A stretch of 64,000 nt of DNA from Podarcis muralis (Eukaryota), in NCBI RefSeq assembly GCF_964188315.1, contig NC_135655.1:80166001-80230000 (forward strand), in the 5' to 3' direction. The position numbers and the translations under genes were made by a program. Under the pieces are notes generated by a model that was not told the origin of the DNA, searched no databases, and saw nothing but the letters and a program-made list of their open reading frames with translations. Shown here one piece after another: positions 10,816 through 54,161 of the stretch. The stretch's first letter is position 1. Each line of letters opens with the position of its first letter.

Positions 10816-10990
10816 CTGTCCCAACCAACGGGGCACTGCTTGCTGGCTGATGGTAGCAAGCAGAACTAGATGTCCAAAAGGAACGAACCATTCATTTATT
10901 TAAGGAACTGAAGTTGGGAACTTGACGGACGAATGCAGAAAGCTGAAGTCTAGCAGCATGTAACCTAGCAACCAGCACCTAGCAACTAGC
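10816..10990 (-). promoter_or_regulatory. SAXO4: Candidate SAXO4 promoter and non-coding first exon with tandem RFX X-box sites
   Basis: GTAACCTAGCAAC at 10960-10972 (reverse GTTGCTAGGTTAC) plus a second CCTAGCAAC half-site at 10978-10986. Minus-strand donor CAG|gtaag at 10816/10815. Matching acceptor cttcag|agaagATG at 6790/6789. Confidence 0.6.
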
Positions 10991-15072: not shown

Positions 15073-18000
15073 TCAGTGTGAAGCTTCAACAAGATACTCA
15101 AGATCTGGTTGTTGCAGTCTCTTTTCTCTGTTCTTGTTTTTGGTAAACTCTCTAAGCATCTCCATGACTTCATTTTCAAAGATTTCGGGAGCAGGCTTTG
15201 CTTCTTTGGGGAGAAAAAAGGAAGAAGTGAAACAACAGTATAAGCTGTGCTACCAATGTCTGAAGATTCTGTACACTGAGGTGCCCACCAGATGTTGGAT
15301 TCCAACTCAACAGTGCCAGCCAACAAAGATAAGAGTTGTAGTCCAGCAAAATCTGGATGAAAACACATTGGCTACCCCTGCTCAGAACTACAGTCTACAG
15401 ATCTAGTAGGTTTTCAGAGATCTTTTTGTCACTGGACTTAAAATTATTTGTCAAGCCCCATTTCAAAGACATCCCAGTTAGTGTGTTAAGTACAGAAAAG
15501 GAAACAAAATGGAATGCTTGCTTTGCAAACAAGCGAAAGACATTTTTTATGTGACAGGGAGCAAGAATGTTTTTGGAACTTCTTGTAAAATGGCAGTAGG
15601 AAGTCTCGGCCCGTGGCCCTAATTAGGCTGGTGCAGGTCACATGAGGCTGTTGCCCACAACCCACAAGATGTCGTAAGTGAAATGGGGCAGGTATGGGCA
15701 AGAAAAGAACAATCAGGAGTTTAAAGTGAGTTCTCTATTATTTCTTTGAAAGAAGGGTTCTCTGTCAGCACCAATCAGCTGATTAATGCAGACAGGGAGC
15801 CCTGCTGGGAGTCAGTGGCACTCCAAACAGAGCATTTTCTCCTTTGTAGAGAAAAAACGACTAGCTGTTTGGAGCAAACACTTTGAATCCTAATTGCTAC
15901 CTCCAAATGGACTTCAAAGGTTCCCTGTAATGCTCATCAGCTGATTGGTGCTGAAAGTGCATCTTCAAAGAGGATTGTTGTATAGTAACCCATTTGAATG
16001 TTGATAGGTGTTATTTGATGTATTATGCCATCAGGTGACTGACAGTTGGGTGGTCCCATGCATCTGTCAAAGTTGGCCCATGGGAAGCAGGGGGAAGCAG
16101 AGTATTGGCTTACTGGCCAGATCCAGTTCCCCACCCCTGCCATAAAATATATAATATACAGTGGTACCTTGGGTTACAGACGTTTCAGGTTACAGACACT
16201 GCTAACCCAGAAATAGTACCTCGGGTTAAGAACTTTGCTTCAGGATGAGAACAGAAATCGCACGGCAGCAGCATGCCAGCAGCAGGAGGCCCCATTAGCT
16301 AAAGTGGTGCTTCAGGTTAAGAACAGTTTTAGGTTAAGAACTGACCTCCAGAACGAATTAAGGTCTTAACCTGAGGTTATTATCATTATTATGTATTATC
16401 ATTAACTATACAGCAATTCTGCAACCTAAAACTATACTTGTTAAGGAGGATGTTAAGTTATACTAAATTCAAAAAGGGCTTACTGCAAATAAAAATACAT
16501 ATGTTTTAAAGGTAGAGTATACATTAGTTATACTCTTGATCAACCTGACTGCTAGAGTTGGAATGTTTATATGGTGAACATGACAATTTTTAGACCCTGC
16601 TCATAGCTAAAACTGTATTTCGGATTGTCAGTGACAACCTTCTAGGACAATCACACACCTTTTCAGGACAGAGGTCGAAATATTACATGTACTATGCTGC
16701 TGTGTGTGGTCCAGAGGGCAGTAACACGAGAGCAAGCATTTTCTGTGACGGCTCCCCACTTGTGGAATGTTCTCCCCAAAGGGGCTTGCCTGATGCCTTA
16801 TTTACATATCTTTAGGCATCAGTCAAAAACATTCCCGTTCTTCCAGGCTTTTGGCCTTTTTAACTGTGTGCAGGGAGGTTATTGTTTGTTACTATGTTAT
16901 ATATTTTTATATTATGAAATACCCTTCATAAGACACGCCCCCCAAGTCACATAAGAGCCAATAGCAAGTGACCCCAAAATACAGTGTTTTGCTTTACCTG
17001 TTGCCCAGTAGTAGATATCCCAATCATTGCTGGGCTCATTAATCAGGCGATCATAAAGATCTAGCTGTTGCTCATTCATTCGATTCAGATTCTCTTTGGC
17101 AAAGAAACTATGGGAAACAATAAAACAGCATACTGGGAAAACCAGAGTAGGTAGAAAAAAAGATACAGATACCACAATGTAATAAAAATACTACATTCTG
17201 GCTATGCAAGTGTCAGAAATTTCTGCACACCCATTCAGACAAACAAAAGGCATTATTACAGTTCAAGGTCCAATTCTCTCCAGGCAAAAGCACTGAGGAG
17301 CAGGGCCACTGAGGGGTGTGGCCTTTGAAGAAGAGTCCCAGGAGCTGGATAGAGGGTCCCAGAGGGGAGACCACATTCATCCCCAGGTTCCCCTCTACCA
17401 GTTCAAGATAAACCAGTGTCTGACTATACCCTTGATAACAAAGAGAAAACAGAATGGACAATCTTCTCCTTTTTCCTCTATAAGCTGATTTTCAATATTT
17501 CATAACAATGCTTCCTAGTGGTGTCCTTGGATAAGGGTATTTCCAAGTGCAAGGAGAGTGCAACATTTCTTTTTTTAAAAAATGTAGGTTTATAAAATGA
17601 TGCACACTATGGAGAAAGTAGACAACAATGATTAGGTACTCACTGTTTTTCAGCTAAATTTCCAGTTGCATTTTATAAGTTTAAACTGCCCAGAGAACAT
17701 ACGGTAGTTTCATCATTCTTATCTCTGTTTTATTATACATTATAAAGTATAATAATAATAATAATAGAAAAATTCTAATAAAAGGGGGGGGGAGAGATAC
17801 TGGAGTGTGGGAATTTTAAAGACTCGATTCTTAATTTCGTTACCAGGAAACAAGTCCAAGTTGAAAGCAACGAGGAGGTTTAGGAAAGGCAGAACAGAAG
17901 GCGACGGCTCACCTGAGCAGGAGGCAGTTCTCCAGCATGCCCCTCTTGCGGCTCTCGTACAGCAGCCTCGCGCGCTTCCTCGCCGGGGCTTCGTGGGGCC

Positions 18001-18477
18001 GAGCCTGCCAAGGCGGCAGAGGGATCTCCAGCAGATCCCGCCCGGAGTCGGAGGGAGAGTCCCCGCGGTAGCAGCACTTCGACGAGCGGAGGACGCAGGC
18101 GGGGAGCAGAAAGAGGCGCTGCGAGACAAACAGGCAGGGAAGCGGCGTAAGGCAACCAAGGGCGGCAGAAGCAGCGTCCGACCCACCACTCCGTTACTAC
18201 GCGAACGCGCCGGAGCTGCTGCTGGTGCGACGGTTGGGGAGTCGGACTAGGACTCGGGGAGGCCGTGACGCTCAGAGAGTGACCTTGGGGGCCAGTCGCT
18301 GCCTCTCAATCTCAGCCTAGCCCGCCTGGCAGGGTTGGTGTTGTGGGGATTAAACCAGGAGGACTAGGCGCTCCACCCTGAGCTCCTTGGAGGAGAAGCG
18401 GGGGGCACGAATTCAACAAATGCCTAGGTACATAATACACATCTCCCTTTACTCACGCGAACGCTCAACGCCGCCAT
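15073..18477 (-). CDS. SDHAF2: Succinate dehydrogenase assembly factor 2, complete, 155 aa, 4 exons
   Basis: Exons 18477-18457 (MAALSVR), 18118-17913 (...[22 protein letters not shown]...[22 protein letters not shown]), 17107-16998 (FFAKENL...[20 protein letters not shown]), 15203-15073 ([43 protein letters not shown]). 468 nt, GT-AG, SDH5-family RGMLEN motif. Confidence 0.98.
16159..16377 (+). mobile_element. Tigger/pogo-like MITE, 3'-truncated
   Basis: TA then cagtggtaccttgggtt..., with internal aggttaagaac repeats. Confidence 0.7.
16700..16900 (+). mobile_element. L2 LINE 3' fragment
   Basis: Translation [15 protein letters not shown]..., typical of the L2 ORF2 end; lies in SDHAF2 intron 3. 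Confidence 0.7.
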
Positions 18478-19500
18478 CCTGGTTTCCTCCGCAGCCGCTC
18501 TACCCTTCACGGCCCACCATAGACACAGAGCCTCTCAGCTTCTCCACAACGCATGCGCCCTAAAGCCACCTCTCGGCCTCCCGCGCCCGCTTCGGAAAAG
18601 CCTCCTACGGAGAGCGGCCTTTTCTGTTTTTGTTTACTCTTGCGCGAGGCGGCAGAGCAACAAACCGGAAGGGGCGGGGCTCGGCAGGGAGGAAGGGGCG
18701 GGGCAACGGGAGGAGGCGCTGGCTGTAGCGGTGAGAGGAGGAGGGGAGGAGGCGGCCGAGGACGAGGGGGGGTGGGGGTTCGCGCGCGCGTTTTGGGCCT
18801 GCCTGGGATTGCTAGGCCTTGAGCAGTATAACGGGCCCCGAGCGGCGCCGGGGAGGCGGCGGAGCTTCGTGGCCGGGGTGAGCGCGGGGGAAGTGGGCAG
18901 CGGCGGCGGCGGCGTGTCTCCGTCGCAGCGCGGGAAAAAGGAGGCGATGGCGGGCGCGAGCGTCCAGGCGCGCGCAGCTATGGCGGCCCGCGGAGGAGGG
19001 GAGGCGGGGAGGGAGGCGGCGGCGGCGGCGGCCCGGCTCTCGGGTTCTCCGCTGCCGGTGGAAGGCCCCGCCGTCCGAGTGGCACTGAGGCGGCGAGGGG
19101 GGCGGGGCCGCCTGCGCGGGATCCTCGGCGGAGCGGGGCTGCGCGGGAACGGGCCTGGGCTCTGCCGGCGGCGGCCGCGTGAGGCGGCGATCTCACTAAC
19201 CTGCGTCTCCTTCCCGCTTCTCTTTGCTCTGTGACCCCCGCAGTGCGGCTCTTCCTTCTCCCCCCACCCCCGGTTCTCTCGGCGGCTCCCCTGGAGAAAT
19301 ATGTCGGAAGGAGTGGACCTCATCGACATCTACGCCGACGAAGAGTTTAACCAGGTGAGCGCGGCTGCGGACCCCGCTGGGTGGGCGTAAGGGCTGCGCC
19401 ACCGTCTCGGCGGGATGTGGAAGGGCGGCAGGTGAGCGCTAGAAGAAGAGGCGAACTCTCCACGAGCCCCGAAACTTCGGCCCGTGCTGAGGTCTCAAAA
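17800..19500. promoter_or_regulatory. CpG island and bidirectional SDHAF2/CPSF7 promoter
   Basis: Very GC- and CpG-rich. Divergent ATGs at 18477 (minus) and 19301 (plus). ETS CCGGAAG at 18665-18671 and NRF1-like GCATGCGC at 18551-18558. Candidate CPSF7 5' UTR donor at 18731 and acceptor at 19243/19244. Confidence 0.9.
18247..18420 (+). mobile_element. Squam3-like SINE in SDHAF2 intron 1
   Basis: gtgaccttgggggccagtcgctgcctctc...cagcctagcc...agggttg...ctccaccctgagctccttggaggagaag; related to 9970-10158. Confidence 0.6.
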
Positions 19501-22500
19501 GAGAGGTTTGTCCTCAGGTGCGTTGTTAGGCTGCTGGAGCATCCTTTCCTTGCACGGTAGAAATGCGAAAATCTCTGTAGAAGCAAATTCCGTTGTGTGA
19601 AAAGTTCGTTGAGTGAGAAGTGAATAGTGTTAAATCAGCGTTATAACTGGAGATTTCCTAATAAACTCCTCACATTTGCCAATTGGTGTGAATTGTTTTA
19701 CTCTACAGGAAAGAAAACCTCATGAACCAAATGAATGCATGTTGGAAAAAATGTTGAATCACTATTTGTGCGTGTGTGTTTTGGAATGTATGAAGGCTTC
19801 CTTTAAAAAAAAAAGAAATAGGAAGTTACAGCATGATAGAAATAGAAAGTAATAGCATGTTAGTCTCCGTAGTCTCTTAAGTGAGAGGCGCCTTCCTGGA
19901 ATCAAGTTAACATAACAGTTGAGGATGCTGAATCTTTTAGAAATATGTAACCTGGGTCAGTGAGCAGACCAAGATGGTTGGTACAGTAGCTCCTGCATGT
20001 GATTTCAAGTTACATAGTATTCTGTCCCATTCGCCGCACCACATTGACACAAAAAATAAAACATGGAAACTGACAGGCAATTACGCAGTTAATCACAGGC
20101 AATACTAGCACCTTCATAGGAAAAGATCCTTCAGTTTTGTGCACACATTGCTTGCAGTACATATTCTTTATAGCCTAAAAAGTGAACAGTTAAGTGATGT
20201 TAGGGGTGTAGGTAACAGCAACTTTAGTCCACCTTACAGTTCTACTTCCCACGTTTCATGCCTGCTTATACCTAATATTTTTTGTTACAATTATAAATTG
20301 GGTCATCTTAGTTATTGAAATGACTGTGTTTAATGGGAGAAAGAAGTGGGAAGACAGGATAACCTTTTCTGTCTGATGTACTAACTTTGTGTGAGAGTGC
20401 ATTGCACTAGAAATCAAATCTGGTTTGTGGTGTATATTGTTCCCTATTGATTTCAATCCTCAAGGCTTGATTAATGTAGCACACTTTATGTGGGGCTACC
20501 CTTTATCTAGTCCGGAAGCTTCAATTTGTGCAGAATGCAGTGGCCAGACTGCTCAAAGGAGCAACATACAACTGCTGCTGAGGGAGCTGTTGTGGTTGGC
20601 TGTTTGTTACCTGCCTAGGTTCAAGGTACTTACATTAATTCACAAAACCCTAAACAGTACAGGCCTTTGCAATACGATTTTTCTCTTTAATGATGTTTTA
20701 TTGATGCTTTTTGCTGCTTTTATTTTTATATGCTGTTAACCACTTTGGCATATTTTGATGAAAGTGTGGATTATAAATACATAAATAAATAAATAGAAAT
20801 AAACACCCACATGTGTTTCAAGTGTGTGTTTATGTATTACTTTAAATAGAACATTAAGAAGGCCATGCAATTCCATAAGCAGTAGGACTGGAACCAAACT
20901 TACACTGAACAGAATTATACTGTAACCACAGAAACATGGCAACCAGCAGCCAGTTTGTTCATAATAACTCCTTTAGTGGCATTGTTCAGTGGCAGAGCAC
21001 AACAAACCACGCAGGAGGTCCCAAGAGCAGTCCCTGCCATCTCCAGATAGTGACTGACTGCTGTCTGAAGCCCTGGAGAACCTTTGCCAGTTGGTCTAGC
21101 AAATACTAAGCTATATGGACAGTGGTCTGACTTGCCTTAAACCAGCACCCAATATTCCTACAAACCTGGGCTGAAGAACATATAGCTCCATATGCTTTAG
21201 GGCCCCTCTGCTACCTTCCGTCCTGGGCTGCATGGTTAGTGCTCAGGGATGATGGGCATTGTAGTTAAGCACATCTGGGGGGGGTGTCACAGGCTTCCTA
21301 CATGTGCAGTACTCATAGTCCTTACTCCAGGTAAAGATAAAGCATATAGTTTATATTGCCAAGGTCCCAAGTTTGATCTTGCCACCTCCAAGCATCTCCA
21401 TTTTGTCCCGTCATTAATTCCTGGTCACACCCATTCTTTCCTGTTGATTTATTTACTACTATGCATAAGTTTCATTTCACAAGGGTTCTAGTTTATGTTC
21501 ATTAAGTATCCCTGTATGTGGTTATAGCACTAGATTGATTGGTGTACAAGAGACGATTAATACCTATATGTCAGCTTTCCTGTATCTTGGTTTGGGATGT
21601 GTAGGAACATTTCCTTTTTTGGGTTGACGTTAGGGGTGCCCAGTGCTAATTCCCTCCAATGTCAGGTGTACATTCAGGTGTATTCATGTACATGCCATCT
21701 TGCATTCACAACTAGTGCAAAGGCACTTAGCTGTTTTCAGTAATTTTGAATATATGAATGCTGGTGAAGTTGTTGCAACATCACACAGGGTTTCTGCTGC
21801 TGCACTAACTGTTTTTTCTGACTGCATGGCTCTAGGTAATGACCACATTTCATCTCTGGGAGCATTGGATGGATGGATGCTTGTCTCTGGAAGGCGTGGG
21901 GTGTATGTTAAATGTTCCACTTGATCAGGGAAAATTTATTGTATTCTGCCTATAGTACCCCATTTTTAAATATTCTGTTCCCTATCAAGAGTAAAAGAAG
22001 TATAACACGAGTATGTAATGAATTAATTTTATCTATAAGAGTTTTTCATATTTCTACAATAGTTTTCTAGAGTAAAGGACTGTTCTTGTAAACTTGGTAA
22101 TCTGTTCTGGTGAAGGTGTTCTACCCTGAAAAAGTTTTAATTACAACAAATCACTGGTGTAGATGACACCATTATAGCTTTCAGACAAATATGTTTTATA
22201 TATTTATTTAAAATTCCTAGTTGTGGCAAGAGGAGAAACATAAAATATACTGAGGACCAAATCCTCTTGTTCAGGTATTTGTTACATAATTCAAAAACTT
22301 TATATGACTTTTGTGCACATTTATCATGTGTGCTATGTCTATTTCCTGTAGTATTTCTGCCTACCATACACTTCATTCTGTATACCTTCAGCCACTCTCC
22401 TCTTTAATGTGTGCTTACCTAGTCTTCACCCACATTGGCTTGTTCCCCAGTGGATAGATTTAGGCCACATTCGCAGCATACTTTTAAAGTACTATGATAC

Positions 22501-41722: not shown

Positions 41723-41850
41723 CATAAAAGGGCATTTGCCTGTGACTGGCGGATGAGGTGGTAGTACTTTCAGAATGCAGCTTGAGTGGTGAACAGTCTG
41801 TGGGAGGGGCTTAATGCTGAGTGGGTGGGTTTACCTGGTTGCTAGGTGAT
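41723..41850 (+). promoter_or_regulatory. Candidate promoter of the fascin-like gene: CATAAAAG TATA-like box and X-box-like GTTGCTAGGTGAT
   Basis: CATAAAAG at 41723-41730; GTTGCTAGGTGAT at 41838-41850; no CpG island. Confidence 0.4.
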
Positions 41851-41943
41851 GATTGTGATCTAAGGGACCAGGATTAATCTCAAGTGAGCCCAGATAACTG
41901 GTCTGATGAATGGGTACCATTCAAGTCTCTTGTCATTCTCACC

Positions 41944-44900
41944 ATGACATACTCACTAGAATTTGGCCTTGTTAATGCGGCCAACCGGTACCTGACTGCT
42001 GAACCTTTCCGTTTCCAGGTGGCAGCCACAGGCAAGCAACTGAAGCCTCGCCAGTTGTGGGTACTGCAGTTTGTGAGCCCACAGGGAGCTGGGGCAGCTG
42101 GCCCAGGAGAAGGGGCTGGCCAAAAGCTTCACCTGATCAGTGCACTGAAACGCTACTTGGCGGCTGACGCAAATGGAAAAGTCACCTGTGACCAGGACAA
42201 ACCAGGGCCTCAGACCTTCTTTCTCTTGCATCAGTATCCAGATGGCAAGGTGCTATCTCTCACCCAGGCACAAGCATCCTATCTCTCAAGTGTAGCTTAT
42301 GTTTGATATTATCGGGCTGGAATTCTGGACAAAGGGTTGGGTGGGTGGGTGAGACGGAGGGCAGAAGGTAGGAAAACAATGTTTAAAGTTGCCTCAATAG
42401 GGCCTCAAAACTATTCCGCTATTGACCAAATGTGGACCTCTTGTTTTGCTTACAAATGTTTTTTACAATTAAGAGGCAGAAATGAGGGCAGGATTGAGCT
42501 CGATTTGCAGACTAGTTTGCTGTGGTGAGAAGCAGGGTTTTTCTAGATTCTTACAGGTAAGTTCAGGCAGCAGATTCCTGCACTCCAGTGCTGTAAAGTG
42601 CATCAGGAAGAGTGCAAAATGTCCCTGGACTCTTCCCCCCCGCCAATGGTCTCCTTGGGAAGCTCTTTGCCCCGTGGCCAAACAGTATGATAGCCACTAT
42701 GGGCTGAAGGGGAGAGAATGTGTCTGAATAGCTTATTTGAGTCCCTGTGCTAAGAGTTGCCTGGTGTATCCTTCAAGGTGCCCTAGCCACTTCCTATCCA
42801 CAACTGGAAACAGCTGTTGCACAATGGAATTTAGGTGATCATGGCAACTCCATAAGCCCAAAGGTGTAACGTAATTGGTGTAATGATACCTGAATTTTAT
42901 TCTGCCATGTTCTTTGCTCATTGACAGTATTCTTGCTTTTCTTGTCTTGGGCAATGTAGCTGACCAGACATCCTTCCCTCCCTGCAGGTGTCCTTGCAAA
43001 ATGAACAGTCCAAGCGCTACCTGGGTGGAGCAGAGGAGAACGTCACTTGCTTTGCCCAGGCTGCCACCGAAACTGAAAAATGGACCCTCCACCTGGCTGT
43101 GCACCCCAATGTTGCCATGTACAACCCCAACAGGAAGCGTTATGTGCGGTGTGACGATAAAACGGGGGTGCTGCGCTGTGACCGTGACATGCCCTGGGGG
43201 GCTGAATCAGTCATCACTATCTACTATGATTTCAGAGGTGGGTGGTGGCATTTTCCTATTTTGTTTTCAATTGATATGTCAATTTTTCTCTCTAATACTG
43301 TAACACACATCTCCCCCCCCCCCTTTGTTGGGGGAGCGTGTTAAAGAAGCAAAACAAGCTTTCATTCTGCTGTAGGGTTACACACACACACACACACTTA
43401 CAGTAATTCGTATTGCAGATGAGGACTTATAGCTACCATACTAACAAGAAAGTTGCTGCTTCTGAACTAAGGATTGTTTAAAGTTTTCTGTTATCCTCTC
43501 CAACTATGGAGCAGACAACCTGGGGTAAGTCTGAACACCTGGAAAGACTTAAGAAATTTGAGAGTTGGAGAAAGTCTGTACCGGTCACAGGCTTTCTCCT
43601 CCCACAGTGAGAAAGTTGCTACTTTATTCTACAGATGTTTGTCTGCTTGTGATTTTACCTGTACCTGAGGATTTCTAAGTGCTACAGGTGGGTGGGGTGG
43701 CCTGGGAAGGCAGTAAGTGCTTCTAAGTGGAAGGTCTTAATTCAAAAAGTTTGAGTGACACTGCCTTATTTACACATCTCTATCCAAAAGCCACCCAAGC
43801 ACCTTCTAAGATAGTCCTCTGTTATTGATGTGTGAAAAAGTTCAGTTTGAGTCATTTGCATCTCCTCCAATAGGTCTGGAGTCCAATGGTGAGAGAAGGC
43901 AATTTTCCCCATACATACCAGGTGAATTCAAATTCTGTTTACCCAAGAAGTCACTGTGGCTGGCAGGAATTTTGATTTCCTTAACATCATTAATTAGCTT
44001 GGGTAATTCTTAGAACTACTAATTGCCCTATGCAAGACTTTCTGGTAAGTTAGACACCAGTGCAAACTTTCCAAATAAGGCAAGAAAGGGAATTGTCTGT
44101 GCAGAGAAGTTTCCAAGTGCAAATCCTCTTTCCTGACCGTATTGATGTTGGAGGTTCCCCACTCTCACACACACACTTTTAAGTGAAATTGCACACTAGG
44201 CTAAAGAATCTAGTACAACCAGTTTTTAAAACACGCATGTAGTGTGGATAAAGGTGTGTATTAGTGCAGATGGGAACATGACTTCAATCCCGATCTCAGC
44301 CTGCATGTGCCCATGGCACATCTCACTATACCTGGGTAGGGCCTCATGGCCTCTAGCTTTATCAAGCACACATGTAAACCCCCAAAGTAACTATGCAAGA
44401 AAAATAGGGTGTAATCTACGAGGAAACAAATGCAGTATCAGCACCACCAATGCTGTACAAAGCTGAGGCCCAATGAACCTCAACTTGCCTATCAGAACAA
44501 AGCACAGGGGGCTGTTTACACACATGTACAAATGATATATGAGATTCTGGGTAAGGGAAATACAATGGGAAATGTTAAGGGCGAACAGGACTAGTGTGCT
44601 CTAAAGGGTTAGTGTTTGGAACTGCAGGCAGGGTGGGCCTGTGTGGCAATTCTGCAGTGAAACAAGCATCAGCCCTGATGCTGCTTTGTAAGACAATTGA
44701 TTTGGAGATTCTTTTCCAGGACTGAACACCAAGCTGCTGTCAACCTCTCATCTCTCTCGCCTTTGTCTCCAGCAAAGAAGTATGGATTGAGGAATGGGGC
44801 TGGCAAACTGTTGGCTTCCAACGGCTCACTGGTACCAGATGTTACCCCACAAACTTTGTACTCCCTGGAGGTGCATGGCGGCTTGGTCGCTCTGCGGGAT

Positions 44901-47900
44901 GAGGAGGGAAAGTACTTGACTGGGCGAGAGGGTAGCATGAGAACCGTAAAGATGGACAAACCTGGACGGGAGGAACTCTTCAGCATGGAATCCAGCCCTG
45001 CCCAGGTCTCTATGCGCTCTTCTTCTACTAACAAGTTCATTTGCTGCAGGCCAGGTAAGTCAGGAGAAAACAGCACTATCTATATTGCATTGCACTTTGT
45101 GAAGCCTCTGCAGCTGATTGGCTTTTCCGGTCTGATGAGATGGAATGTTTGTGACCATTCCACCTGCTCAGGAAATGAGGCACAGTGGTAGTCCACATTC
45201 TGCGAGCAATGGGGCAGTTGTCAGTTTGGTTGGGTAAAACTGAGATAAGACTGACTTGGGAGGCAGGGTGAAGGCTGGGAGGAGTTCTTAGAAGGCAGGT
45301 AAGCTTAGATGCTGGGACCTCAGAGGCAAGATGGCTGAAGAGAGGGTGCAGAAGTAAGAAGCAGAAAAAGGGCACATACAATTGAAGTAGCAAGGATCGA
45401 GTAAGATTACGGTCCCTGAAAAAAACCACAGCATTTCTTATTAAAAGTGGTGTGACAGAAGTGCTAGGGAGGCTAACCAGAATACAAGATGGCCAATCGA
45501 AATGGGGCTAAGTAGGTTGTGAGCTGAAAAAGCAAAAACCTGAGGAAATGAATGGTGTAGCTATAGAACTAGGGCAAGAAGACTGGAAGAAAACCACACA
45601 AAGTGCTTTGACTAGAGAAACCCAGGATGGAATTCAATGTCACTTTAAGGCGATTGTTCTGCTTCCCAGATGAAGTGATTTCACCTTTCCCACATACACT
45701 GTTCGGGGGTTGTCTTGAACCTGCAGTGCAGATTTGGGGGGCCATGGGAGAAGCCATGTAGCCAGAGATCTTCCATCGGGCTCCCCTGGTGAGACAGGTT
45801 ACTTGAATCCACACACTGCACTCCTTTGGAAGAAACAAAGTACAGCAAGCCAGCAACTTACGGCACATTTAACTTGTGCACAATTAATCCAGATCTGAAA
45901 GAGGATTTGAATTTAGGCTTGCACGTGATGTTTTGTCTTCCTCCAAAGATAAAGATAGGAAGGTCCAAATGATCCTAGGTCAGTTGACACACAAACAATG
46001 CCCCCATTCTCTGCACAATGTTTTCCTCTTTCCATCCATGAAGCACTGATTTCAGCCTGCAAGGAGTGGGCAATGGCATATGTAGGAATGCTGACCTCGG
46101 GTGTTTCTTCCTTGCCCCCTGCAGGTGCTGATCTCTATGCCAATGCTATGGCTGTTGGCAACACCGAGATCTTCCAGGTGCTGTTTGATGACACCACAAA
46201 GAAGGTCTGCTTCCGTAGCCACAGCGGCGCGTATATGTCCTTGGTGAGTGTGCCTGCCACGCATTACGAGGAACAGCAGTGATCAGGCAGGACCAGCTAT
46301 TTCAAATTGTTTCCTAACTATGGAGAAGGACTGCAGTTCGTAGGTGGTAGAGCACCTGCTTTGCATGCAGAAAGCCCCAAGCTTTTTTCAGCCACAGCCA
46401 CTCATTCCAGTCTTGTCCCCAACCTCCTTCTGACTATATTCTACAATGGGCAACACTGAGACTAAGGAGGGAGGAAGCTGACAGGCAGCCCCACCCCACG
46501 ACTGGTTGTAAGTGAGAATGGGGGGACTGATCAAGGGCAGAGTGAGGATGGTGGGGCAGGGCCCCTTTTGCCCAAGTGGATCAGCTTCCACTGGATACAT
46601 CTGTGCCCAGATTGTGGTGCACTAACTTAATCTGGAATTCTTTTAAATGTGAGCAAGGAGGTGGGTGAGTACTGATAAAAGGAGGCTTGTTAAATAGCAG
46701 AAGATAGCTCTTGGTCCTGGACTTGTTTGTTAATGTTAGTAAGGGCTGTCTCAGTCCTTTTCCAAAATATTTTTGTCAACTTTAGTGCGGGTGGGGGGAG
46801 TTACTCTATTCTACAAAGCAAATTATACACAATCCTCCTTGTGGAAAAGTGAAAATTTGTTTTTTGTACACTGAGGATGGAGAACCTGTGGCTCTCGAGT
46901 TGTTGTACTCAAATGCCTATTGTCCTTGATCATTGGCTGGCAGTTATTACTCCAACATATTGAGGGCCTCAGGTTTCTCATCCCTGCCACAGATGAAATA
47001 TGTAAGTGTGCAGTAGGAATGCACATCTTCCTGAACAACCTCTTAAGAAAAAGCTAACTGATTAAGCCCGGAGCGCTGGAGACATCTTTTTCAGGTCTGC
47101 TATTCACTTACCTAGGAGTAAAACTTGTTGAACTAAATGAAACTTATAAGTAGAGTTGAAGGTGGTCTTCTGGCTGTATTGTTCATGGTGTGCACTTACA
47201 CTATCTGCTATGAACCCTAGTCAGAAATTTTGCAGATTTTTGTTGTGCTTCAAAACCTATACTGCACATCTAACATACCATTTAGAAATCTTATAGTTTG
47301 GCTTCAGTCTGGGCTATGGTTCACATAGTGCAACTTGAAGTGTGAAGTCAACAATAAAGTGGCTTTGAATAAAGCCAAGGTCCACCACCATCCCTAGCTT
47401 GCTGATGTTAGAAACCTTCCCCTTTTGGAGGTAACTACTGCTGGACTAACCTCCCTGGTATTGAGAAGCTCATGCATTGCTGTACTCTTGTGTTGCGTCA
47501 CCTACCACAATGGAATTCTCAGTCTTGATGCAGCACCAAATACCTTCCACTGAAAATATATCAACATGGATCTCAGAACGTAGCTGATAAAGGGACTGCT
47601 ACAGAAGGTTTCTATCAGTCAAAGTAACCCAAAAACACAAAAAGCACTTTCCAACGAATGCATCCTGTCTTTTGCAGGGTCCTAATGACTGTATTAACAG
47701 CAACACCAAACAGGACAGGAATGTCTGGTTCGACATCCAGTACCAAGACCAAAAGGTGTGTCTCCGCATAGCAGACAAGCAAGTGTCCATGCGGCCCAAT
47801 GGACAGCTCCTGGCAATTCCCAAAGCTGCAGGTACAAGTTGGTAGAGAGCTTCTCTTACAAGCACCAGGGCATCAGTGTGGACAGGTGAACACGGCTAGG

Positions 47901-49643
47901 GTGGGAAGAGACTGCACACTGCCAGCTGCAAATTAGCTTTAGGTAGTTCTAGGGGAAAGGAATGGAAGCGACAGCCTTGCACTAGATAGCTCTCTAGAGG
48001 AATAATGTGGGGAAAGTCTTTGCACAGAAACCAAGCTGTCCCTGGATATAAAATTGGAACATGGGGAGCCAACCTTAAGCCCATCCTATGAAATGGCTTT
48101 TTAGACACCTCAAGGGCTTCATGTTGGAAACCAACAACCAAAACTTTCATAATCTTGCTCTTGCAAGATGGAATGAGTTCTGTTTACACTCCCTTACGCT
48201 TTGGAGTAGCTAACATCACTACAAATACAGCCTAGATGAAAGAGAAAAAAACATCCTAAGACTCACAAAACACTGCCCCTCTGTGCATATAATCCTGGCC
48301 CCCAGAACTGCATACCAAGTAGGTTGACATTGCTTCTGTAATATGATCTGGGAAGCAGTCAGAGAATGAGTTCCAGTTTGGGGGGAACCACCACCAGAAA
48401 TAGCTGTGCAGTTGTTGTCCATAGTGGTTACTTGAATGAACTTGGGGCAAATGCCACTGACAGTAGAAATCGGGATAAAACCCAAGGGAAGAACAGTATT
48501 TCTGTTACAACACTCAGCCTGGCTTCTCAGTGTGGGGTGATTTTTCCTGATCTTTAGCACTGAAGTTGACTTTCCCTGGGGAGCTGATTCCCTCTTGAGA
48601 GCAAAAGGAAGGGTGGCAAAATAGTTCTCTTTGAAAGCCAGGTGCGGCCAATGCTAAAGGTTTCCCTTGTACCTTCAGGGAAGAGTGAAGATTTCCTGCT
48701 GGTGCTGGTGAACCGGCCACTGCTTGTCCTGCACAGTGATGCCGGCTACGTGGGTCTGTGTTCTGACATGAGGAAGTTGGAAGGGAACTGCGTCAGCTAT
48801 GTTGCCAGCAGCCTGTCGCTCACCGAGGAAGGCTACTACAACTTCCAAGTTGGTTAGTATGTTTCCAGGTGGGACTAAGTATATTCCAAGGGGTTGGGGT
48901 CTCCTAGTATCTGTGTTGCGAGAGAAACATGACCTACTCATAAATGGGAGCTGCCATCAAAGGGTTTTTATAAAAACAAGCCTAGTTTATATGTAGCCAT
49001 AAGAGGGAGCCAAAACTTGCTTTCCCAAACCAAAACAATGCAAAAGAGCGCATCGTCACTATTCCCCACCCCCCTTTGCTATTTGTTTTGCTCCATGACC
49101 CCTGGACAATAGTTTCCTAGGCCCAATTAAGGATAAACTACTGTTCAGGTTGGATGGCCATCTGTCATGGTTGATTTAGCTGTGATTCCTGTGTTGCAGG
49201 GGGTTGGACTAGATGACCCTTGGGTCCCTTCCAACTCTATTATTCTAGGTGTCAGTCATGTTTTCACTTTATACATGGTTTCTTTCTAAACCATACCTAG
49301 TATTGCCATGACAAGCACATCCTAATTACCTGTGATTCTTTTACCTCGTAAAAGTCGGAGAGATCCAAGAGCTGGTCTTGCCACACCTCTACCTTCCCTG
49401 ACCCTCACCCTTCCTTCCACTAATTCTGCCACTTGACCTGCAGGCAGCAAGTACTGGGCTCTGGATAACGATGGACAAATCTTGGTAAACAGTGACCGTC
49501 CCAGCAATTTCACCATCCAGTTTGCATCCTCCAGCTGCCTGATCATCAAAGCACCCAACAACAAGTTTTTTGTGGCTGAGCAAGGAGGCCGACTATGGGC
49601 AGGGGCTTCAGACGCATCTGGAGCAACACTGTTCCATTTCTGA
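41944..49643 (+). CDS. Fascin-family actin-bundling protein (divergent paralogue, four beta-trefoils), 494 aa, 7 exons
   Basis: Exons 41944-42249, 42988-43237, 44773-45054, 46125-46243, 47678-47831, 48679-48852, 49444-49643. 1485 nt, all GT-AG, phases 0/1/1/0/1/1, no internal stop. Collinear with recalled FSCN1 (FGLVN..RYLTAEPFRF, RYLAAD.NGKVTC, RYLGGAEENVTCFAQ, WTLHLAVHP, DRDMPWG, LVNRPLLVL, SKYW, LFHF*). Start context accATG. Confidence 0.95.
49139..49228 (+). mobile_element. CR1 LINE 3' tail
   Basis: gttgcagggggttggactagatgacccttgggtcccttccaactcta; a similar tail lies at about 8600-8660. Confidence 0.85.
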
Positions 49644-49669: not shown

Positions 49670-49675
49670 AATAAA
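49670..49675 (+). terminator. Polyadenylation signal of the fascin-like gene
   Basis: AATAAA 27 nt after the stop, followed by a T/GT-rich downstream element. Confidence 0.75.
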
Positions 49676-51811: not shown

Positions 51812-54161
51812 CTGGAGAAGGCAGCCAGAGTGAGAACACCCAGTAACAGCTCCACAGCATAGAAGAGGAGGAGGATAGCATTAAGGATGGCCTCTAGCCG
51901 CAGAGCATAAGTCTGCAGCAGCAGATAATAGGCTGCCATCACTGCTGCTGGAAAGGTTAAAGCCAGACTGATAGCAAGTGGTACTTTCCGTTGACAGAGG
52001 TTCCCTTTTGAGCCTGCCATACACAGAAAATATGAAAAAGAAAATGCATAACCTGTTCAGCATAAAAGCCACAATATTTGGAATCTGAGGGCACAAAATG
52101 AATAGCTCTACTTTTCAGGGATCAGTTCTCATTTAACTCATTTAACTAAATAAGTTAAAAAATTAAAAAATTGTCCAGTAGCACCTTAGAGACCAACTAA
52201 GTTTGTTCTGTGTATAAGCTTTCGTGTGCATGCACACTTCTTCAGATACACTGAAACAGAAATCACCAGATCCTTATATATAATGGGAAGTGGGGTGGGG
52301 TATTTCTTGGAAGGGTAGTAGGAGATGGGTGATTGGCTCAATGGGTATGGTAAACCTGTTGATGACTGAACATTTTTTTAATTTTTTAAATATATATATA
52401 TATATTGACTACGTCAGACCAACACGGCTATCTACCTGAATCAAGAATCATTTAACTGAGATTAAGGAATGGGATTTTGCATTTAACATTTGTACTGTAG
52501 TTCATAAGCTAGTCTCAGGTCAGGAAGGACAGTCAGACTGGATGAATGGGATCTCATATTTCCACCCGCATAATGTTGTCTTGCCTCCTACCTACTCCTG
52601 AATGAGGGAATGTACCACAGAGCCCCTTTTTCAGCCTTTGGGCATCATTTCATTGGAGGCACCTATTCCAGTTCAGCAGAATAATTAGGAAGACCTAGAA
52701 TGATGGAGTGAAGGCACTGTCAGCACTTTACACTCTGCTCAACTACTCTACTCTCAAACACCTTTGCTGTTGGAGAAGCAGAATTTATCGATGAGTGAAC
52801 CACATTAACAACAACAACAACAAAATTTTATTCATATCCTGCCCATCTGGCTGGGTTTCCCCAGGAGTCATCTTTTCAGGTCAAGTGCCATCAAAGATGC
52901 TCACAAAATGGCAGGTGAGTGCACTACTTGTGGGAACATTTTTATTGAATACTCACCAAAAAATATCCGGGTCACTTCAATCCCAAGATAGAGAAAAAGC
53001 ATAATCAGGTCCAAAGCCAAATTGGCAGAGGGGTAGGGCAACAGGAGTCCTAAGCGGGTACACAAATGGACATGTGCATTAAGAGAACAGCAAAGCCAGA
53101 TGCCTCTTCCCATTTAATGAATTCCTTAATAAAAGAAGAGGGGCTGATGTTGGTTAACATCTAATGTAGCAGCTAGAATGACAACAAACAGTGGGACATG
53201 GATGGTTCTGAAAAAGGCTGTGAACTCTCAAGCAGCTAGGTGAGGAATAAATAATTACACTATCCACTTTGTTCTTTCACTTTCTTCAGGCGAGAGCCAC
53301 AAGGTAAATGCGTAAAAAAAGCCTGCAGGCAACCCAAACATATCATCCCTTCAAAGACTCACCTTTATAGACAAATATGAAAATCTCCAACAGAAAATAT
53401 GTTGCATAATACCAGCCGTTCAGGAACAGGAGAATCTCCAGAGGGGTGGAGGAGAGCTGGCGATCTAGGTGAAACCAGAATATGATTATCTATGGGGTAC
53501 ACATTTTGTGTTCCACTCTCACCTCTTAAAGAGGAGCAGTACAAACTTTCTTGAGAGACTATATTAGAGTTTATGTACACTTCCTTTGTTGTGAGCTCAA
53601 AACTGGGGTGCTGTGTCCTCACCAGCTTAGCGTGGAACCTCAGCAAATGGTCTAACATACCTCAGGCAAAGGGAAACCAACCAGCAGCAGAGAATAAAAA
53701 CCCCACCGATCTGAGAACCCCTTGGAAGGGTCCAAAACCCCGTATTTGGGCAGCTTTACTAGGAGAGGGTTGCGAAGGGGCAGCCTCCCGCAGGACGTGG
53801 CCTCGAGTCTACCACCCTCCTCTGGCAGAATGGTTTTTCTGGGGAAGCTCAGCGCTAGGCTGAGCGAAGAGGCCCCTCATCAGGCTCTGGGGACCCGGGG
53901 GCCACTCTGCCTCCCTCCCCTTCGCTCCGGGAGCGCTTGGCGGGATGCCGTCAGATCCCCGCCGTCGCTGCCGGGCTGCAGCCGGAGCCCGGTTCCCGTC
54001 CCTGCTGCAGGGCTCGGGGTGTCCTGAGCGGCGGGCCGGGCGAGCGGGGTGGGAATCAAGAAGAGCCGAGCCTTCCACGGGGATCAGTCGCGGTGACGTG
54101 ACCTCGCAGCCCCCAGGGCCCTAGAACACTGCCGGGACCCCGACTTACTGCGAGGCGCCAT
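51812..54161 (-). CDS. TMEM216: Transmembrane protein 216 (ciliary transition zone, MKS2/JBTS2); short terminal coding exon not resolved
   Basis: Exons 54161-54149 (MAPR), 53464-53363 (NRQLSSTPLEILLFLNGWYYATYFLLEIFIFVYK), 53049-52957 (GLLLPYPSANLALD...IFF), 52013-51812 (GSKGNLCQRKVPL...YLLLQTYALRLE...LAAFS). Exon sizes 102/93/202 equal the recalled human sizes. Candidate poly(A) signal at 50067-50072. Confidence 0.95.
52165..52440. mobile_element. Penelope-like retroelement fragment with inverted end
   Basis: Same family as 5214-5370. The cagaccaacacggcta end at about 52415-52430 is inverted relative to the body. Confidence 0.8.
52211..52250 (-). ncRNA. Minimal type I hammerhead ribozyme motif (Penelope-associated)
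   Basis: Minus strand UGUAU-CUGAAGA-A-GUGUG-CAUG-CACAC-GAAA-GCUU-AUACA: stem I UGUAU/AUACA, intact CUGANGA and GAAA cores, stem II GUGUG/CACAC, palindromic AGCU in place of stem III. Confidence 0.8.
52804..52862 (-). mobile_element. L2 3' tail stub ending in (TTG)n
   Basis: (aac)n followed by ttttattcatatcctgcccatctggctgggtttccccag. Confidence 0.7.

What the first reader, a model, noticed from the sequence alone, without database searches (positions are those of the whole stretch)
41944..49643. Intact fourth fascin paralogue inserted between CPSF7 and TMEM216
Seen: a full-length 494-aa, four-beta-trefoil fascin with canonical splice sites, good start context, no stops and its own AATAAA, so it looks functional. 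Established (recalled): mammals have three fascins, FSCN1 near ACTB, FSCN2 near ACTG1 and FSCN3 on 7q32, and human CPSF7 and TMEM216 are neighbours with no fascin between them. The protein is clearly divergent from all three as recalled, with a Gly/Ala-rich insertion (SPQGAGAAGPGEGAG) in trefoil 1 and a strongly diverged C-terminal half. Inference: an uncharacterised fascin lineage, either ancient and lost in mammals or relocated in reptiles, inside a cluster of ciliary genes (SAXO4, TMEM216, TMEM138). It may be an undescribed cilia- or sperm-associated actin bundler.
Basis: partly seen in the sequence, partly recalled or inferred. Interest (0 to 1): 0.86.

Follow-up and report, generated by a model that had tools for sequence, protein, structure and literature searches.

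The report
Ancient extra fascin gene in lizard
This is a real, expressed and strongly conserved gene for an actin-bundling protein (a fascin) that sharks, sturgeon, coelacanth, some frogs, turtles, crocodilians and lizards keep at the same chromosomal spot; searches found none in mammals, birds or teleosts, and databases label it only 'fascin-like'.

Summary
Window 41944-49643 (+) carries a 7-exon, 494-aa fascin gene with GT-AG introns. Spliced RNA contigs confirm all six introns. dN/dS is 0.05-0.13 among squamates.

It is not a reptile insertion. The same gene lies next to a CPSF6/7-family gene in a sawfish, next to TMEM216 in a frog, and between or beside these genes in lizards, a python and an alligator. 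The locus is therefore ancestral, and mammals, birds and teleosts most likely lost the gene.

In an ML tree the clade (chondrichthyans, sturgeon, coelacanth, two basal frogs, turtles, alligator, squamates) has 100/100 support and a long stem. It falls outside FSCN1, FSCN2 and the cyclostome fascins. Squamates and turtles also carry separate FSCN1 or FSCN2 genes.

I could not obtain a mammalian FSCN3 sequence, so that relationship rests on indirect evidence: 25-26% identity to FSCN3 against 37% to FSCN1, different synteny, and a different exon number at a shared intron. This favours a separate lineage (about 0.6) over orthology (about 0.3).

The gene is already predicted as 'fascin-like' in many genomes, but no paper in the searchable library describes it. 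The protein keeps core actin-contact residues, lacks the Ser39 PKC switch, and has a conserved RFX X-box-like promoter motif.

The parts
41838..41850 (+). Conserved X-box-like (RFX-type) promoter motif GTTGCTAGGTGAT, about 16 nt upstream of the 5' end of the longest spliced RNA contig
   Evidence: It is the only match to GTTGCYAGGYRAY in the 64-kb window (0.04 expected; the pattern was derived after the fact from orthologues). The same core GTTGCYAGGC lies 84-111 nt upstream of the ATG in Lacerta agilis, python, alligator and Ascaphus. The L. agilis and frog copies fit the classical GTNRCC(N0-3)RGYAAC consensus. RFX binding is inferred, not shown.
41854..41943 (+). 5' UTR, at least 90 nt, holding two short out-of-frame upstream ATGs (41906 and 41910). 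The first opens a 13-codon uORF whose TGA overlaps the main ATG.
   Evidence: The X2 RNA contig starts at 41854. The uORFs are seen in the window and in L. agilis but not in python, alligator or frog.
41944..42249 (+). Exon 1 (aa 1-102): trefoil 1 with the sauropsid Gly/Ala-rich loop
   Evidence: RNA junction 42249/42988
42988..43237 (+). Exon 2 (aa 103-185, ends in phase 1)
   Evidence: RNA junctions in X2 and X5
43874..43921 (+). Optional 48-nt in-frame cassette micro-exon (GLESNGERRQFSPYIP) with AG/GT borders, included in the Lacerta agilis RefSeq model (510 aa)
   Evidence: It is not used in the RNA contigs laid here, which join exon 2 directly to exon 3.
44773..45054 (+). Exon 3 (aa 186-279)
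46125..46243 (+). Exon 4 (aa 280-319)
47678..47831 (+). Exon 5 (aa 320-370)
48679..48852 (+). Exon 6 (aa 371-428)
49444..49643 (+). Exon 7 coding part (aa 429-494 plus TGA)
49670..49675 (+). Proximal AATAAA. Further AATAAA signals lie at 50059 and 51161. One RNA contig (X3) runs on past 49998.

Best explanation
The locus is a functional gene for a monomeric four-beta-trefoil actin cross-linker. It belongs to an old jawed-vertebrate fascin lineage, here called FSCNx, that is separate from FSCN1 and FSCN2 and probably also from mammalian FSCN3. It sits at its ancestral position: CPSF6/7-family gene, then FSCNx, then TMEM216. The lineage survives in cartilaginous fishes, sturgeon, coelacanth, basal frogs, turtles, crocodilians and squamates. 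My searches found no copy in mammals, birds or teleosts, which I read as loss. Shown: gene structure, splicing, transcription, purifying selection, fold, clade membership and synteny. Inferred: it bundles F-actin as fascin-1 does, through two opposite actin-binding surfaces. It keeps E27, F29, K43 (as Arg), R149-K150-R151 and D168 of fascin-1. It has lost the Ser39 protein-kinase-C off-switch (Gln here). The basic R398/K399 contact in trefoil 4 is replaced, and a clade-specific Arg sits five residues further on. Its regulation and one of its actin interfaces therefore probably differ from fascin-1. A conserved RFX X-box-like promoter element suggests, but does not show, expression in ciliated or spermatogenic cells.
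For: Gene model and Pfam Fascin hits. All six introns are confirmed by spliced RNA contigs: 1510 nt at depth 33 in X2 and 2133 nt at depth 213 in X3, both from a close relative, and two junctions in X5, which carries the same species label as the best DNA holder of the window. dN/dS is 0.05-0.09 against Lacerta agilis and 0.09-0.13 against the python Liasis. The AlphaFold model of the 89%-identical Varanus orthologue has pLDDT 91 and pTM 0.88, with TM 0.89 to human fascin-1. Orthologues at 40-96% identity occur in sharks, rays, chimaera, sturgeon, coelacanth, Ascaphus, Discoglossus, turtles, alligator and many squamates; no bird, mammal or teleost member was found. In the careful ML tree the clade has 100/100 support and a stem of 0.83, and it lies outside hagfish + lampreys + FSCN1 + FSCN2 (91/79). 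The AU test disfavours FSCNx + FSCN2 as one clade (p 0.04). Pelodiscus has both fascin-2 and this gene, and Crotalus has a separate FSCN1-type gene. Synteny: sawfish has the CPSF6/7-family gene upstream; Ascaphus has TMEM216 downstream; L. agilis and the python have CPSF7-FSCNx-TMEM216-TMEM138; alligator has FSCNx-TMEM216-TMEM138-CYB561. The six-intron structure is identical in frog, alligator, python and lizards, and two of the introns (102/0 and 185/1) are absent from medaka and amphioxus fascins. Versus FSCN3: identity to human and mouse FSCN3 is 25-26%, against 37% to FSCN1 and 34% to FSCN2, while the literature gives FSCN3 28-29% identity to fascin-1 (PMC7698196, PMC10046292). FSCN3 is thus no closer to this clade than to FSCN1, which is hard to square with FSCN3 descending from within a clade that has a stem of 0.83 substitutions per site. 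Residue mapping comes, using the functional residue list in PMC12086090. Promoter motif.
Against: No mammalian FSCN3 sequence could be put in the tree, so separateness from FSCN3 is indirect. It rests on identities in the saturated 25-29% range that were measured by different methods. The distributions look complementary: FSCN3 is reported next to PAX4 and ARF5 in mammals and not in fish (PMC3563606), and FSCNx was found only outside mammals. That pattern is what hidden orthology with relocation and acceleration would produce. One chimaera record names its copy 'fascin-3'. The AU test does not reject FSCNx as sister of FSCN1 (p 0.15), so its exact branching among vertebrate fascins is unsettled. 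Absence from birds, mammals and teleosts comes from searches of limited sensitivity, not from genome scans. The RNA runs are of guessed type and unknown tissue. No biochemical evidence for actin bundling exists. R398, essential in fascin-1, is not conserved.
Confidence: 0.6

Rival explanations
1. The clade is the non-mammalian orthologue of FSCN3. In the mammalian stem the gene moved, or was copied, from the CPSF7-TMEM216 interval to the PAX4-ARF5 interval. It then became testis-specific and diverged very fast. On this reading vertebrates have three fascins after all, and this is lizard FSCN3.
For: The known distributions are complementary: this clade has no mammalian member, and FSCN3 lies beside PAX4 in mammals but not in fish (PMC3563606). 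Both lineages are the divergent fascins that branch outside FSCN1+FSCN2 (for this clade; recalled from the literature for FSCN3). Both have more exons than the five of FSCN1-type genes (seven exons for FSCN3 is recalled). The Callorhinchus member is named 'fascin-3' in nr. Precomputed Pfam PF25490 hits are mostly missing in this clade, as in the Atlas 'fascin-3' cluster, whereas FSCN1 and FSCN2 carry them.
Against: Identity to human and mouse FSCN3 is only 25-26%, lower than to FSCN1 (37%), FSCN2 (34%) and even Drosophila singed (29%). FSCN3 is reported as 28-29% identical to fascin-1. A descendant of the amniote FSCNx gene would share the clade's stem of 0.83 substitutions per site and should be clearly closer to it than to FSCN1. 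Synteny differs completely. In human FSCN3 the exon that starts at c.1121 is called exon 5 (PMC12904016). Its phase-1 Gly-codon intron corresponds in position and phase (inferred, no FSCN3 alignment) to the one preceding exon 6 in every tetrapod FSCNx gene. PAX4, LRRC4 and CALU beside FSCN3 have recalled paralogues on human chromosome 11 (PAX6, LRRC4C, RCN1), which would fit FSCN3 and FSCNx being duplicates from the vertebrate genome doublings rather than one gene. That last point is recalled and was not tested.
Confidence: 0.3
2. It is a reptile-specific duplicate or relocation of FSCN1 or FSCN2 that was inserted between CPSF7 and TMEM216.
For: The sauropsid-only Gly/Ala loop. Exon 1 is about 50% identical to human fascin-1.
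Against: Orthologues at the same locus occur in sawfish, frog, alligator, python and lizards. The clade includes chondrichthyans, sturgeon and coelacanth with 100/100 support and lies outside FSCN1 and FSCN2.
Confidence: 0.01
3. It is a decaying or untranscribed gene copy that only looks intact.
For: None found. There is no CpG island at the promoter (GC 0.41-0.49), and no reads were laid from one deep raw-read RNA run of the species (X23).
Against: There is no stop or frameshift. Splice sites are canonical. Spliced transcripts cover the whole CDS. dN/dS is 0.05-0.13. The exon structure has been identical for more than 300 My.
Confidence: 0.01

Closest known systems
Fascin-1 (FSCN1; human structures 1DFC/3LLP, F-actin-bound 8VO5)
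   Same: It has a similar length (494 against 493 aa) and four beta-trefoils, with TM 0.89 and 37% identity. E27, F29, R149-K150-R151 and D168 are kept, and K43 is Arg. The introns at about aa 279 (phase 1) and 428 (phase 1), and probably 370 (phase 1), match those of a teleost FSCN1-type gene.
   Different: It forms a separate clade with a long stem. Squamates have their own FSCN1. Ser39 is Gln. R389/E391/H392 and R398/K399 are replaced. There are two extra introns in the region that is one exon in FSCN1-type genes. It has a sauropsid Gly/Ala loop. It lies next to CPSF7 and TMEM216, not ACTB (the FSCN1 neighbourhood is recalled).
Fascin-2 (FSCN2, retina and hair-cell stereocilia)
   Same: Same fold and 34% identity.
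   Different: The AU test disfavours a joint clade (p 0.04). The turtle Pelodiscus carries both fascin-2 and this gene.
Fascin-3 (FSCN3, mammalian testis fascin)
   Same: Both are divergent vertebrate fascins outside FSCN1+FSCN2. TM is 0.89. A phase-1 intron in a Gly codon lies at about aa 370-374 in both, going by position and phase without an alignment (PMC12904016). The known taxonomic ranges are complementary.
   Different: Identity is only 25-26%. FSCN3 lies at GCC1-ARF5-FSCN3-PAX4 in mammals (PMC3563606, PMC3759438). The exon numbering at the shared intron differs (exon 5 against exon 6).
Invertebrate and cyclostome fascins (Drosophila singed, sea-urchin fascin, amphioxus, lamprey)
   Same: Four-trefoil architecture, 28-33% identity, and conserved E27/F29/R149.
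   Different: All of them keep Ser39, and most keep a basic residue at the R398/K399 positions; this clade does not. They branch outside or beside the vertebrate paralogues.

Membership tests
Fascin family (Pfam PF06268, four tandem beta-trefoils) | Sequence matches to the Fascin domain model along the protein | tested here: met
   PF06268 scores above its gathering score on exons 1, 2, 3 and 7 and weakly on exon 4. phmmer against human fascin-1 PDB chains gives E 2e-94 over residues 4-509 of the 96-99%-identical L. agilis protein.
Fascin family (Pfam PF06268, four tandem beta-trefoils) | Compact four-trefoil fold | tested here: met
   The AlphaFold2 model of the Varanus orthologue (89% identical to the window protein) has pLDDT 91.1 and pTM 0.88. 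Foldseek gives TM 0.87-0.91 to FSCN1, FSCN2, FSCN3 and singed. The window protein itself was not modelled, because no reference exists for a spliced product.
Fascin family (Pfam PF06268, four tandem beta-trefoils) | Residues shown to be needed for F-actin bundling in fascin-1 (F29, E27, K43, R149, R398; PMC12086090) | tested here: inconclusive
   E27, F29 and R149 are kept and K43 is Arg. R398 is Cys here and non-basic across the clade, with a clade-specific Arg five residues later in the same loop.
Fascin family (Pfam PF06268, four tandem beta-trefoils) | Bundles actin filaments | not testable with these tools
   Needs recombinant protein and low-speed co-sedimentation or EM.
FSCN1 orthologue group | Groups inside the FSCN1 clade and is the species' only such gene | tested here: not met
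   The clade lies outside FSCN1 (amphibian, teleost, mammal, bird and snake rows) in the ML tree. The snake Crotalus adamanteus has a separate FSCN1-type protein (P0030). A sister relationship of the whole clade to FSCN1 is not rejected (AU p 0.15).
FSCN2 orthologue group | Groups inside the FSCN2 clade and is the species' only such gene | tested here: not met
   The FSCN2 clade (hamster, crocodile, tinamou, turtles) has 100/99 support and excludes it. Holding them together costs 14.8 lnL, AU p 0.04. Pelodiscus has both genes.
FSCN3 orthologue group | Groups with mammalian FSCN3 in a tree | not tested
   No FSCN3 sequence could be retrieved. The word-index searches did not reach it, and the single exhaustive search, run with exon 1, returned no protein identified as mammalian FSCN3 among those looked up.
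FSCN3 orthologue group | Closer in sequence to FSCN3 than to other fascins | tested here: not met
   Foldseek identities are FSCN3 25-26%, FSCN1 35-37%, FSCN2 34% and singed 29%.
FSCN3 orthologue group | Conserved neighbourhood GCC1-ARF5-FSCN3-PAX4 | tested here: not met
   In every species examined the neighbours are the CPSF6/7-family gene, TMEM216, TMEM138 and CYB561. The mammalian FSCN3 neighbourhood is taken from PMC3563606 and PMC3759438.

The most novel reading that the evidence does not exclude
Jawed vertebrates began with four fascin genes, not three. This fourth one (a would-be 'FSCN4') is a duplicate from the early vertebrate genome doublings and was kept for more than 450 My at the CPSF7-TMEM216 locus. 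It lacks the Ser39 protein-kinase-C switch that every other animal fascin examined here retains. It is driven by an RFX-type promoter in ciliated, sensory or spermatogenic cells, and it was lost independently in mammals, birds, teleosts and most frogs.
Probability: 0.4. Interest if true: 0.6.

Novelty: new member of a known kind. Interest (0 to 1): 0.5.

Why it matters
Reviews state that vertebrates have three fascins (PMC7698196, PMC10046292, PMC10611713). A fourth, ancient, strongly constrained lineage that model mammals, chicken and zebrafish all lack would change the family's evolutionary picture. It would also give a natural variant in which the best-known regulatory site (Ser39) and an essential actin contact (R398) are replaced while the fold and the other contact residues are kept. 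That makes it useful for asking which contacts fascin bundling really needs. If it instead proves to be the long-missing non-mammalian counterpart of FSCN3, it would explain where the odd mammalian testis fascin came from. Either way the practical value is modest: the gene is already predicted in public annotation and belongs to a well-understood protein family.

Tried and rejected
**Retrieving mammalian FSCN3 for a tree**
- The whole-protein word-index search with the turtle orthologue reached only about 44% identity plus one stray hit.
- A 95-residue region search around a motif I recalled as shared found clade members only.
- A profile search found FSCN1 and FSCN2 but not FSCN3.
- The exhaustive search with exon 1 returned no protein identified as mammalian FSCN3 among those I looked up.
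- The Atlas and AFDB-cluster searches give names but no usable sequences.

**FSCN3 peptides**
- The boar sperm proteome supplements held none.

**Fascin family phylogeny papers**
- J Pathol 2011 and JMB 2010 are not held.

**Loci for FSCN1/FSCN2 intron maps and more squamate CDS**
- P0224, P0230, P0223 and P0143 are not on record as exact products.
- I used medaka, lamprey, amphioxus and Liasis instead.

**Tissue of expression**
- Run metadata are coded and the 'words' filter takes only SRA library terms.
- One deep raw-read RNA run of the species laid no reads (X23).

**Sawfish upstream gene**
- tblastx of its fragment against the window gave nothing, so it is called only 'CPSF6/7-family' from its Pfam domain.

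**Earlier notes of this scan**
- Nothing was found on fascin, ARF5, PAX4, GCC1 or SND1 in this genome.

**Rejected readings**
- Reptile-specific insertion.
- Pseudogene.
- A functional 'ciliary gene cluster'. The adjacency is inherited synteny, and in Ascaphus another gene lies between the fascin gene and TMEM216.


Full report
**1. The observation**

The seven + strand segments 41944-42249, 42988-43237, 44773-45054, 46125-46243, 47678-47831, 48679-48852 and 49444-49643 join into a 1485-nt reading frame of 494 codons plus TGA.
- Every intron is GT..AG and has a pyrimidine-rich acceptor.
- Intron phases after aa 102, 185, 279, 319, 370 and 428 are 0, 1, 1, 0, 1, 1.
- The start codon sits in CACCATGA, and an AATAAA follows the stop by 27 nt.
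- Pfam's Fascin model scores above its curated cut-off on exons 1, 2, 3 and 7.
- Exon 1 alone matches human fascin-1 chains at E 7e-18.

**2. The gene is expressed**

Logan contigs of RNA runs were laid on the locus.
- Run X2 (a close relative, about 1-2% divergent) holds one 1510-nt contig at depth 33. It starts at 41854, 90 nt before the ATG, and carries all six junctions exactly as modelled.
- Run X3 holds a 2133-nt contig at depth 213 with the last four junctions.
- Run X5, which carries the species label of the DNA run that holds 99% of the window's words, shows the exon 2-3 and exon 5-6 junctions at low depth.
- The kind of run is guessed and the tissues are hidden, but spliced contigs can only come from RNA.
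- One deep raw-read RNA run of the species laid nothing (X23), so expression is not ubiquitous.

**3. The gene is under constraint**

I extracted orthologous CDS from fetched loci with an exact spliced mapper.
- dN/dS is 0.05-0.09 against Lacerta agilis (dS about 0.06-0.09).
- dN/dS is 0.09-0.13 against the python Liasis olivaceus (dS about 0.5-0.7).

**4. Who else has it**

The exhaustive search with exon 1 gave six close representatives and then a sharp drop to other fascins. Named members and two further searches give this picture:
- The window protein is 96% identical to RefSeq 'fascin-like [Lacerta agilis]', or 99% once a 16-residue optional exon is set aside.
- It is 84-89% identical to other lizards and snakes, 61% to a sea turtle, 57% to alligator, 47% to the frog Ascaphus and 40-44% to sharks, rays and chimaera.
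- Sturgeon, coelacanth, the frog Discoglossus and the tegu Salvator also have it.
- No bird, mammal or teleost member appeared. The nearest other proteins are teleost fascin (35%), lamprey fascin (33%) and FSCN2.
- The gene is therefore already predicted in public annotation, always under uninformative names ('fascin-like', 'Fascin-like domain-containing protein', 'fascin'). One chimaera cDNA record calls it 'fascin-3'.

**5. Synteny**

| Species | Arrangement |
|---|---|
| Lacerta agilis | CPSF7-like (RRM + RSLD_CPSF6), this gene, TMEM216 (-), TMEM138 (-) |
| Liasis (python) | Same as L. agilis |
| Alligator | This gene, TMEM216, TMEM138, CYB561-type gene |
| Ascaphus (frog) | TMEM216 lies about 5 kb downstream with one unknown gene between |
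| Sawfish | The upstream neighbour on the same strand carries the RSLD_CPSF6 domain |

- The frog TMEM216 exons match the window's at 51852-53459.
- The position is thus older than the split of cartilaginous and bony vertebrates.
- 'Inserted between CPSF7 and TMEM216' is the wrong polarity: the gene was there first and has disappeared from the human arrangement.

**6. Phylogeny**

A careful IQ-TREE run (LG+C20+F+G4 by PMSF, 54 rows, 495 columns) gives the following.
- The clade of 17 rows has 100/100 support and a stem of 0.83 substitutions per site.
- Its sister, at 91/79, is a group holding hagfish, two lamprey fascins, FSCN2 (100/99) and FSCN1 with the teleost fascins (97/97).
- The two groups together are supported at 96/89, with two unnamed proteins next outside them and amphioxus further out.
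- Forcing the clade together with FSCN2 costs 14.8 log-likelihood units (AU p 0.04). Forcing it with FSCN1 costs 8.5 (p 0.15), so sisterhood to FSCN1 is not excluded.
- The gene is not inside either group. Pelodiscus has both fascin-2 and this gene, and Crotalus has a separate FSCN1-type protein.

**7. Gene structure**

- Frog, alligator, python and lizards share the same six introns.
- The sawfish lacks only the first.
- Medaka fascin has four introns (274/1, 326/2, 367/1, 424/1), and so does amphioxus (273/1, 332/2, 386/2, 429/1). Lamprey has seven, at mostly different places.
- Going by protein position and phase alone (I did not check alignment columns), the introns near 279/1 and 428/1, and probably 370/1, are old. 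185/1, and in bony vertebrates 102/0, mark this lineage.

**8. The FSCN3 question**

This is the crux for novelty, and it could not be tested directly. None of the sequence tools could be made to return a mammalian FSCN3, and I did not type one from memory.

Evidence against orthology:
- The Varanus orthologue is 25-26% identical to human and mouse FSCN3, against 35-37% to FSCN1, 34% to FSCN2 and 29% to fly singed.
- Reviews give FSCN3 28-29% identity to fascin-1 (PMC7698196, PMC10046292). If FSCN3 descended from the amniote copy of this gene, it would share the long stem and should be distinctly closer to this clade than to FSCN1. It is not.
- In mammals FSCN3 lies in the GCC1-ARF5-FSCN3-PAX4 block, and in fish other genes follow pax4 (PMC3563606, PMC3759438).
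- A splicing study places human FSCN3 c.1175 55 nt into 'exon 5'. That puts a phase-1 intron in codon Gly374, and its position and phase match the 370/1 intron here, which precedes exon 6 in all tetrapod copies.

Evidence for orthology:
- The taxonomic ranges are complementary.
- Both lineages are deep and divergent.
- The chimaera record carries the name 'fascin-3'.

I put about 0.6 on a separate lineage (possibly the genome-duplication sister of FSCN3), about 0.3 on orthology, and the rest on other branchings.

**9. How it probably works**

- The AlphaFold model has pLDDT 91 and shows four trefoils. Only the Gly/Ala loop (residues 48-56) is disordered.
- I mapped the residues that the F-actin-bound fascin-1 structure and mutagenesis single out (PMC12086090) through the phmmer alignment and a clade alignment.
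- E27, F29, R149-K150-R151 and D168 are kept, and K43 is Arg.
- Ser39, the PKC site that switches bundling off, is Ser in every FSCN1, FSCN2, lamprey, amphioxus, holothurian and cnidarian row. It is Gln in squamates, Val in turtles and alligator and Ile in sharks.
- The trefoil-4 segment LRGEHGF..CRK becomes LHSDAGY..CSD. R398/K399 are lost, and an Arg five residues on (RL[DE]GN) is near-invariant in the clade.
- I infer a fascin-type monomeric cross-linker with an intact trefoil-1 and trefoil-2 contact set, a remodelled trefoil-4 contact and no Ser39 control. None of this is shown biochemically.

**10. Promoter**

- There is no CpG island.
- GTTGCTAGGTGAT at 41838-41850 lies 16 nt before the 5' end of the RNA contig. 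It is the only such site in the window.
- The core GTTGCYAGGC is kept at the same distance in L. agilis, python, alligator and frog. The L. agilis and frog copies fit the classical RFX X-box consensus.
- RFX factors drive ciliary and spermiogenic genes and bind close to transcription starts (PMC4498915).

**11. Literature and novelty**

- Searches for a fourth fascin, for FSCN3 in reptiles or Xenopus, and for fascin together with TMEM216 found no description of this lineage.
- Reviews count three vertebrate fascins.
- The gene is a new, uncharacterised member of a very well-known family and is already visible as automatic predictions. It is of moderate interest.

Noticed in passing
window 43874-43921 (+): An intact 48-nt in-frame cassette exon with AG/GT borders in intron 2. 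It encodes GLESNGERRQFSPYIP and is included in the Lacerta agilis RefSeq model (510 aa). All RNA contigs laid here skip it. Python and gecko models of 512-517 aa are also longer, but I did not locate their extra residues.
   Followed up: partly
window 41906-41947 and 41910 onward (+): Two out-of-frame upstream ATGs in the 5' UTR. The first opens a 13-codon uORF whose stop overlaps the main start (ATGA). They are shared with L. agilis and absent in python, alligator and frog.
   Followed up: partly
window 49194-49240 (intron 6): A short stretch reaches a summed contig depth in the thousands in all four RNA runs, with many differing loose ends. It looks like a piece of a highly repeated, transcribed element, not part of the gene.
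   Followed up: no
window 49644 to about 51100: The X3 transcript contig runs more than 1.1 kb past the stop, beyond the proximal AATAAA. It reaches the region where TMEM216 (minus strand, from about 50670) ends. This means either long 3' UTR isoforms overlapping a convergent gene or an assembly join of two transcripts.
   Followed up: no
window 10960-10972 (+): The only strict match in the window to the classical RFX X-box consensus (GTAACCTAGCAAC). The gene it belongs to was not identified.
   Followed up: no
window 18000-20000: A strong GC-rich island (GC 0.67 and 0.55 in successive 1-kb windows), presumably a housekeeping promoter upstream of the CPSF7-like gene. Not examined.
   Followed up: no
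L004 (alligator) and P0158 (Podarcis muralis): Public models of the orthologue contain errors. The alligator protein has an 84-residue N-terminal extension not shared by any other member. The Podarcis Ensembl protein replaces several exons with intron-derived sequence.
   Followed up: partly
L001 (sawfish) and L005 (lamprey): The sawfish orthologue spans 21 kb and lacks the first intron of the tetrapod genes. The lamprey fascin gene has seven introns, mostly at positions not shared with any gnathostome fascin examined.
   Followed up: partly
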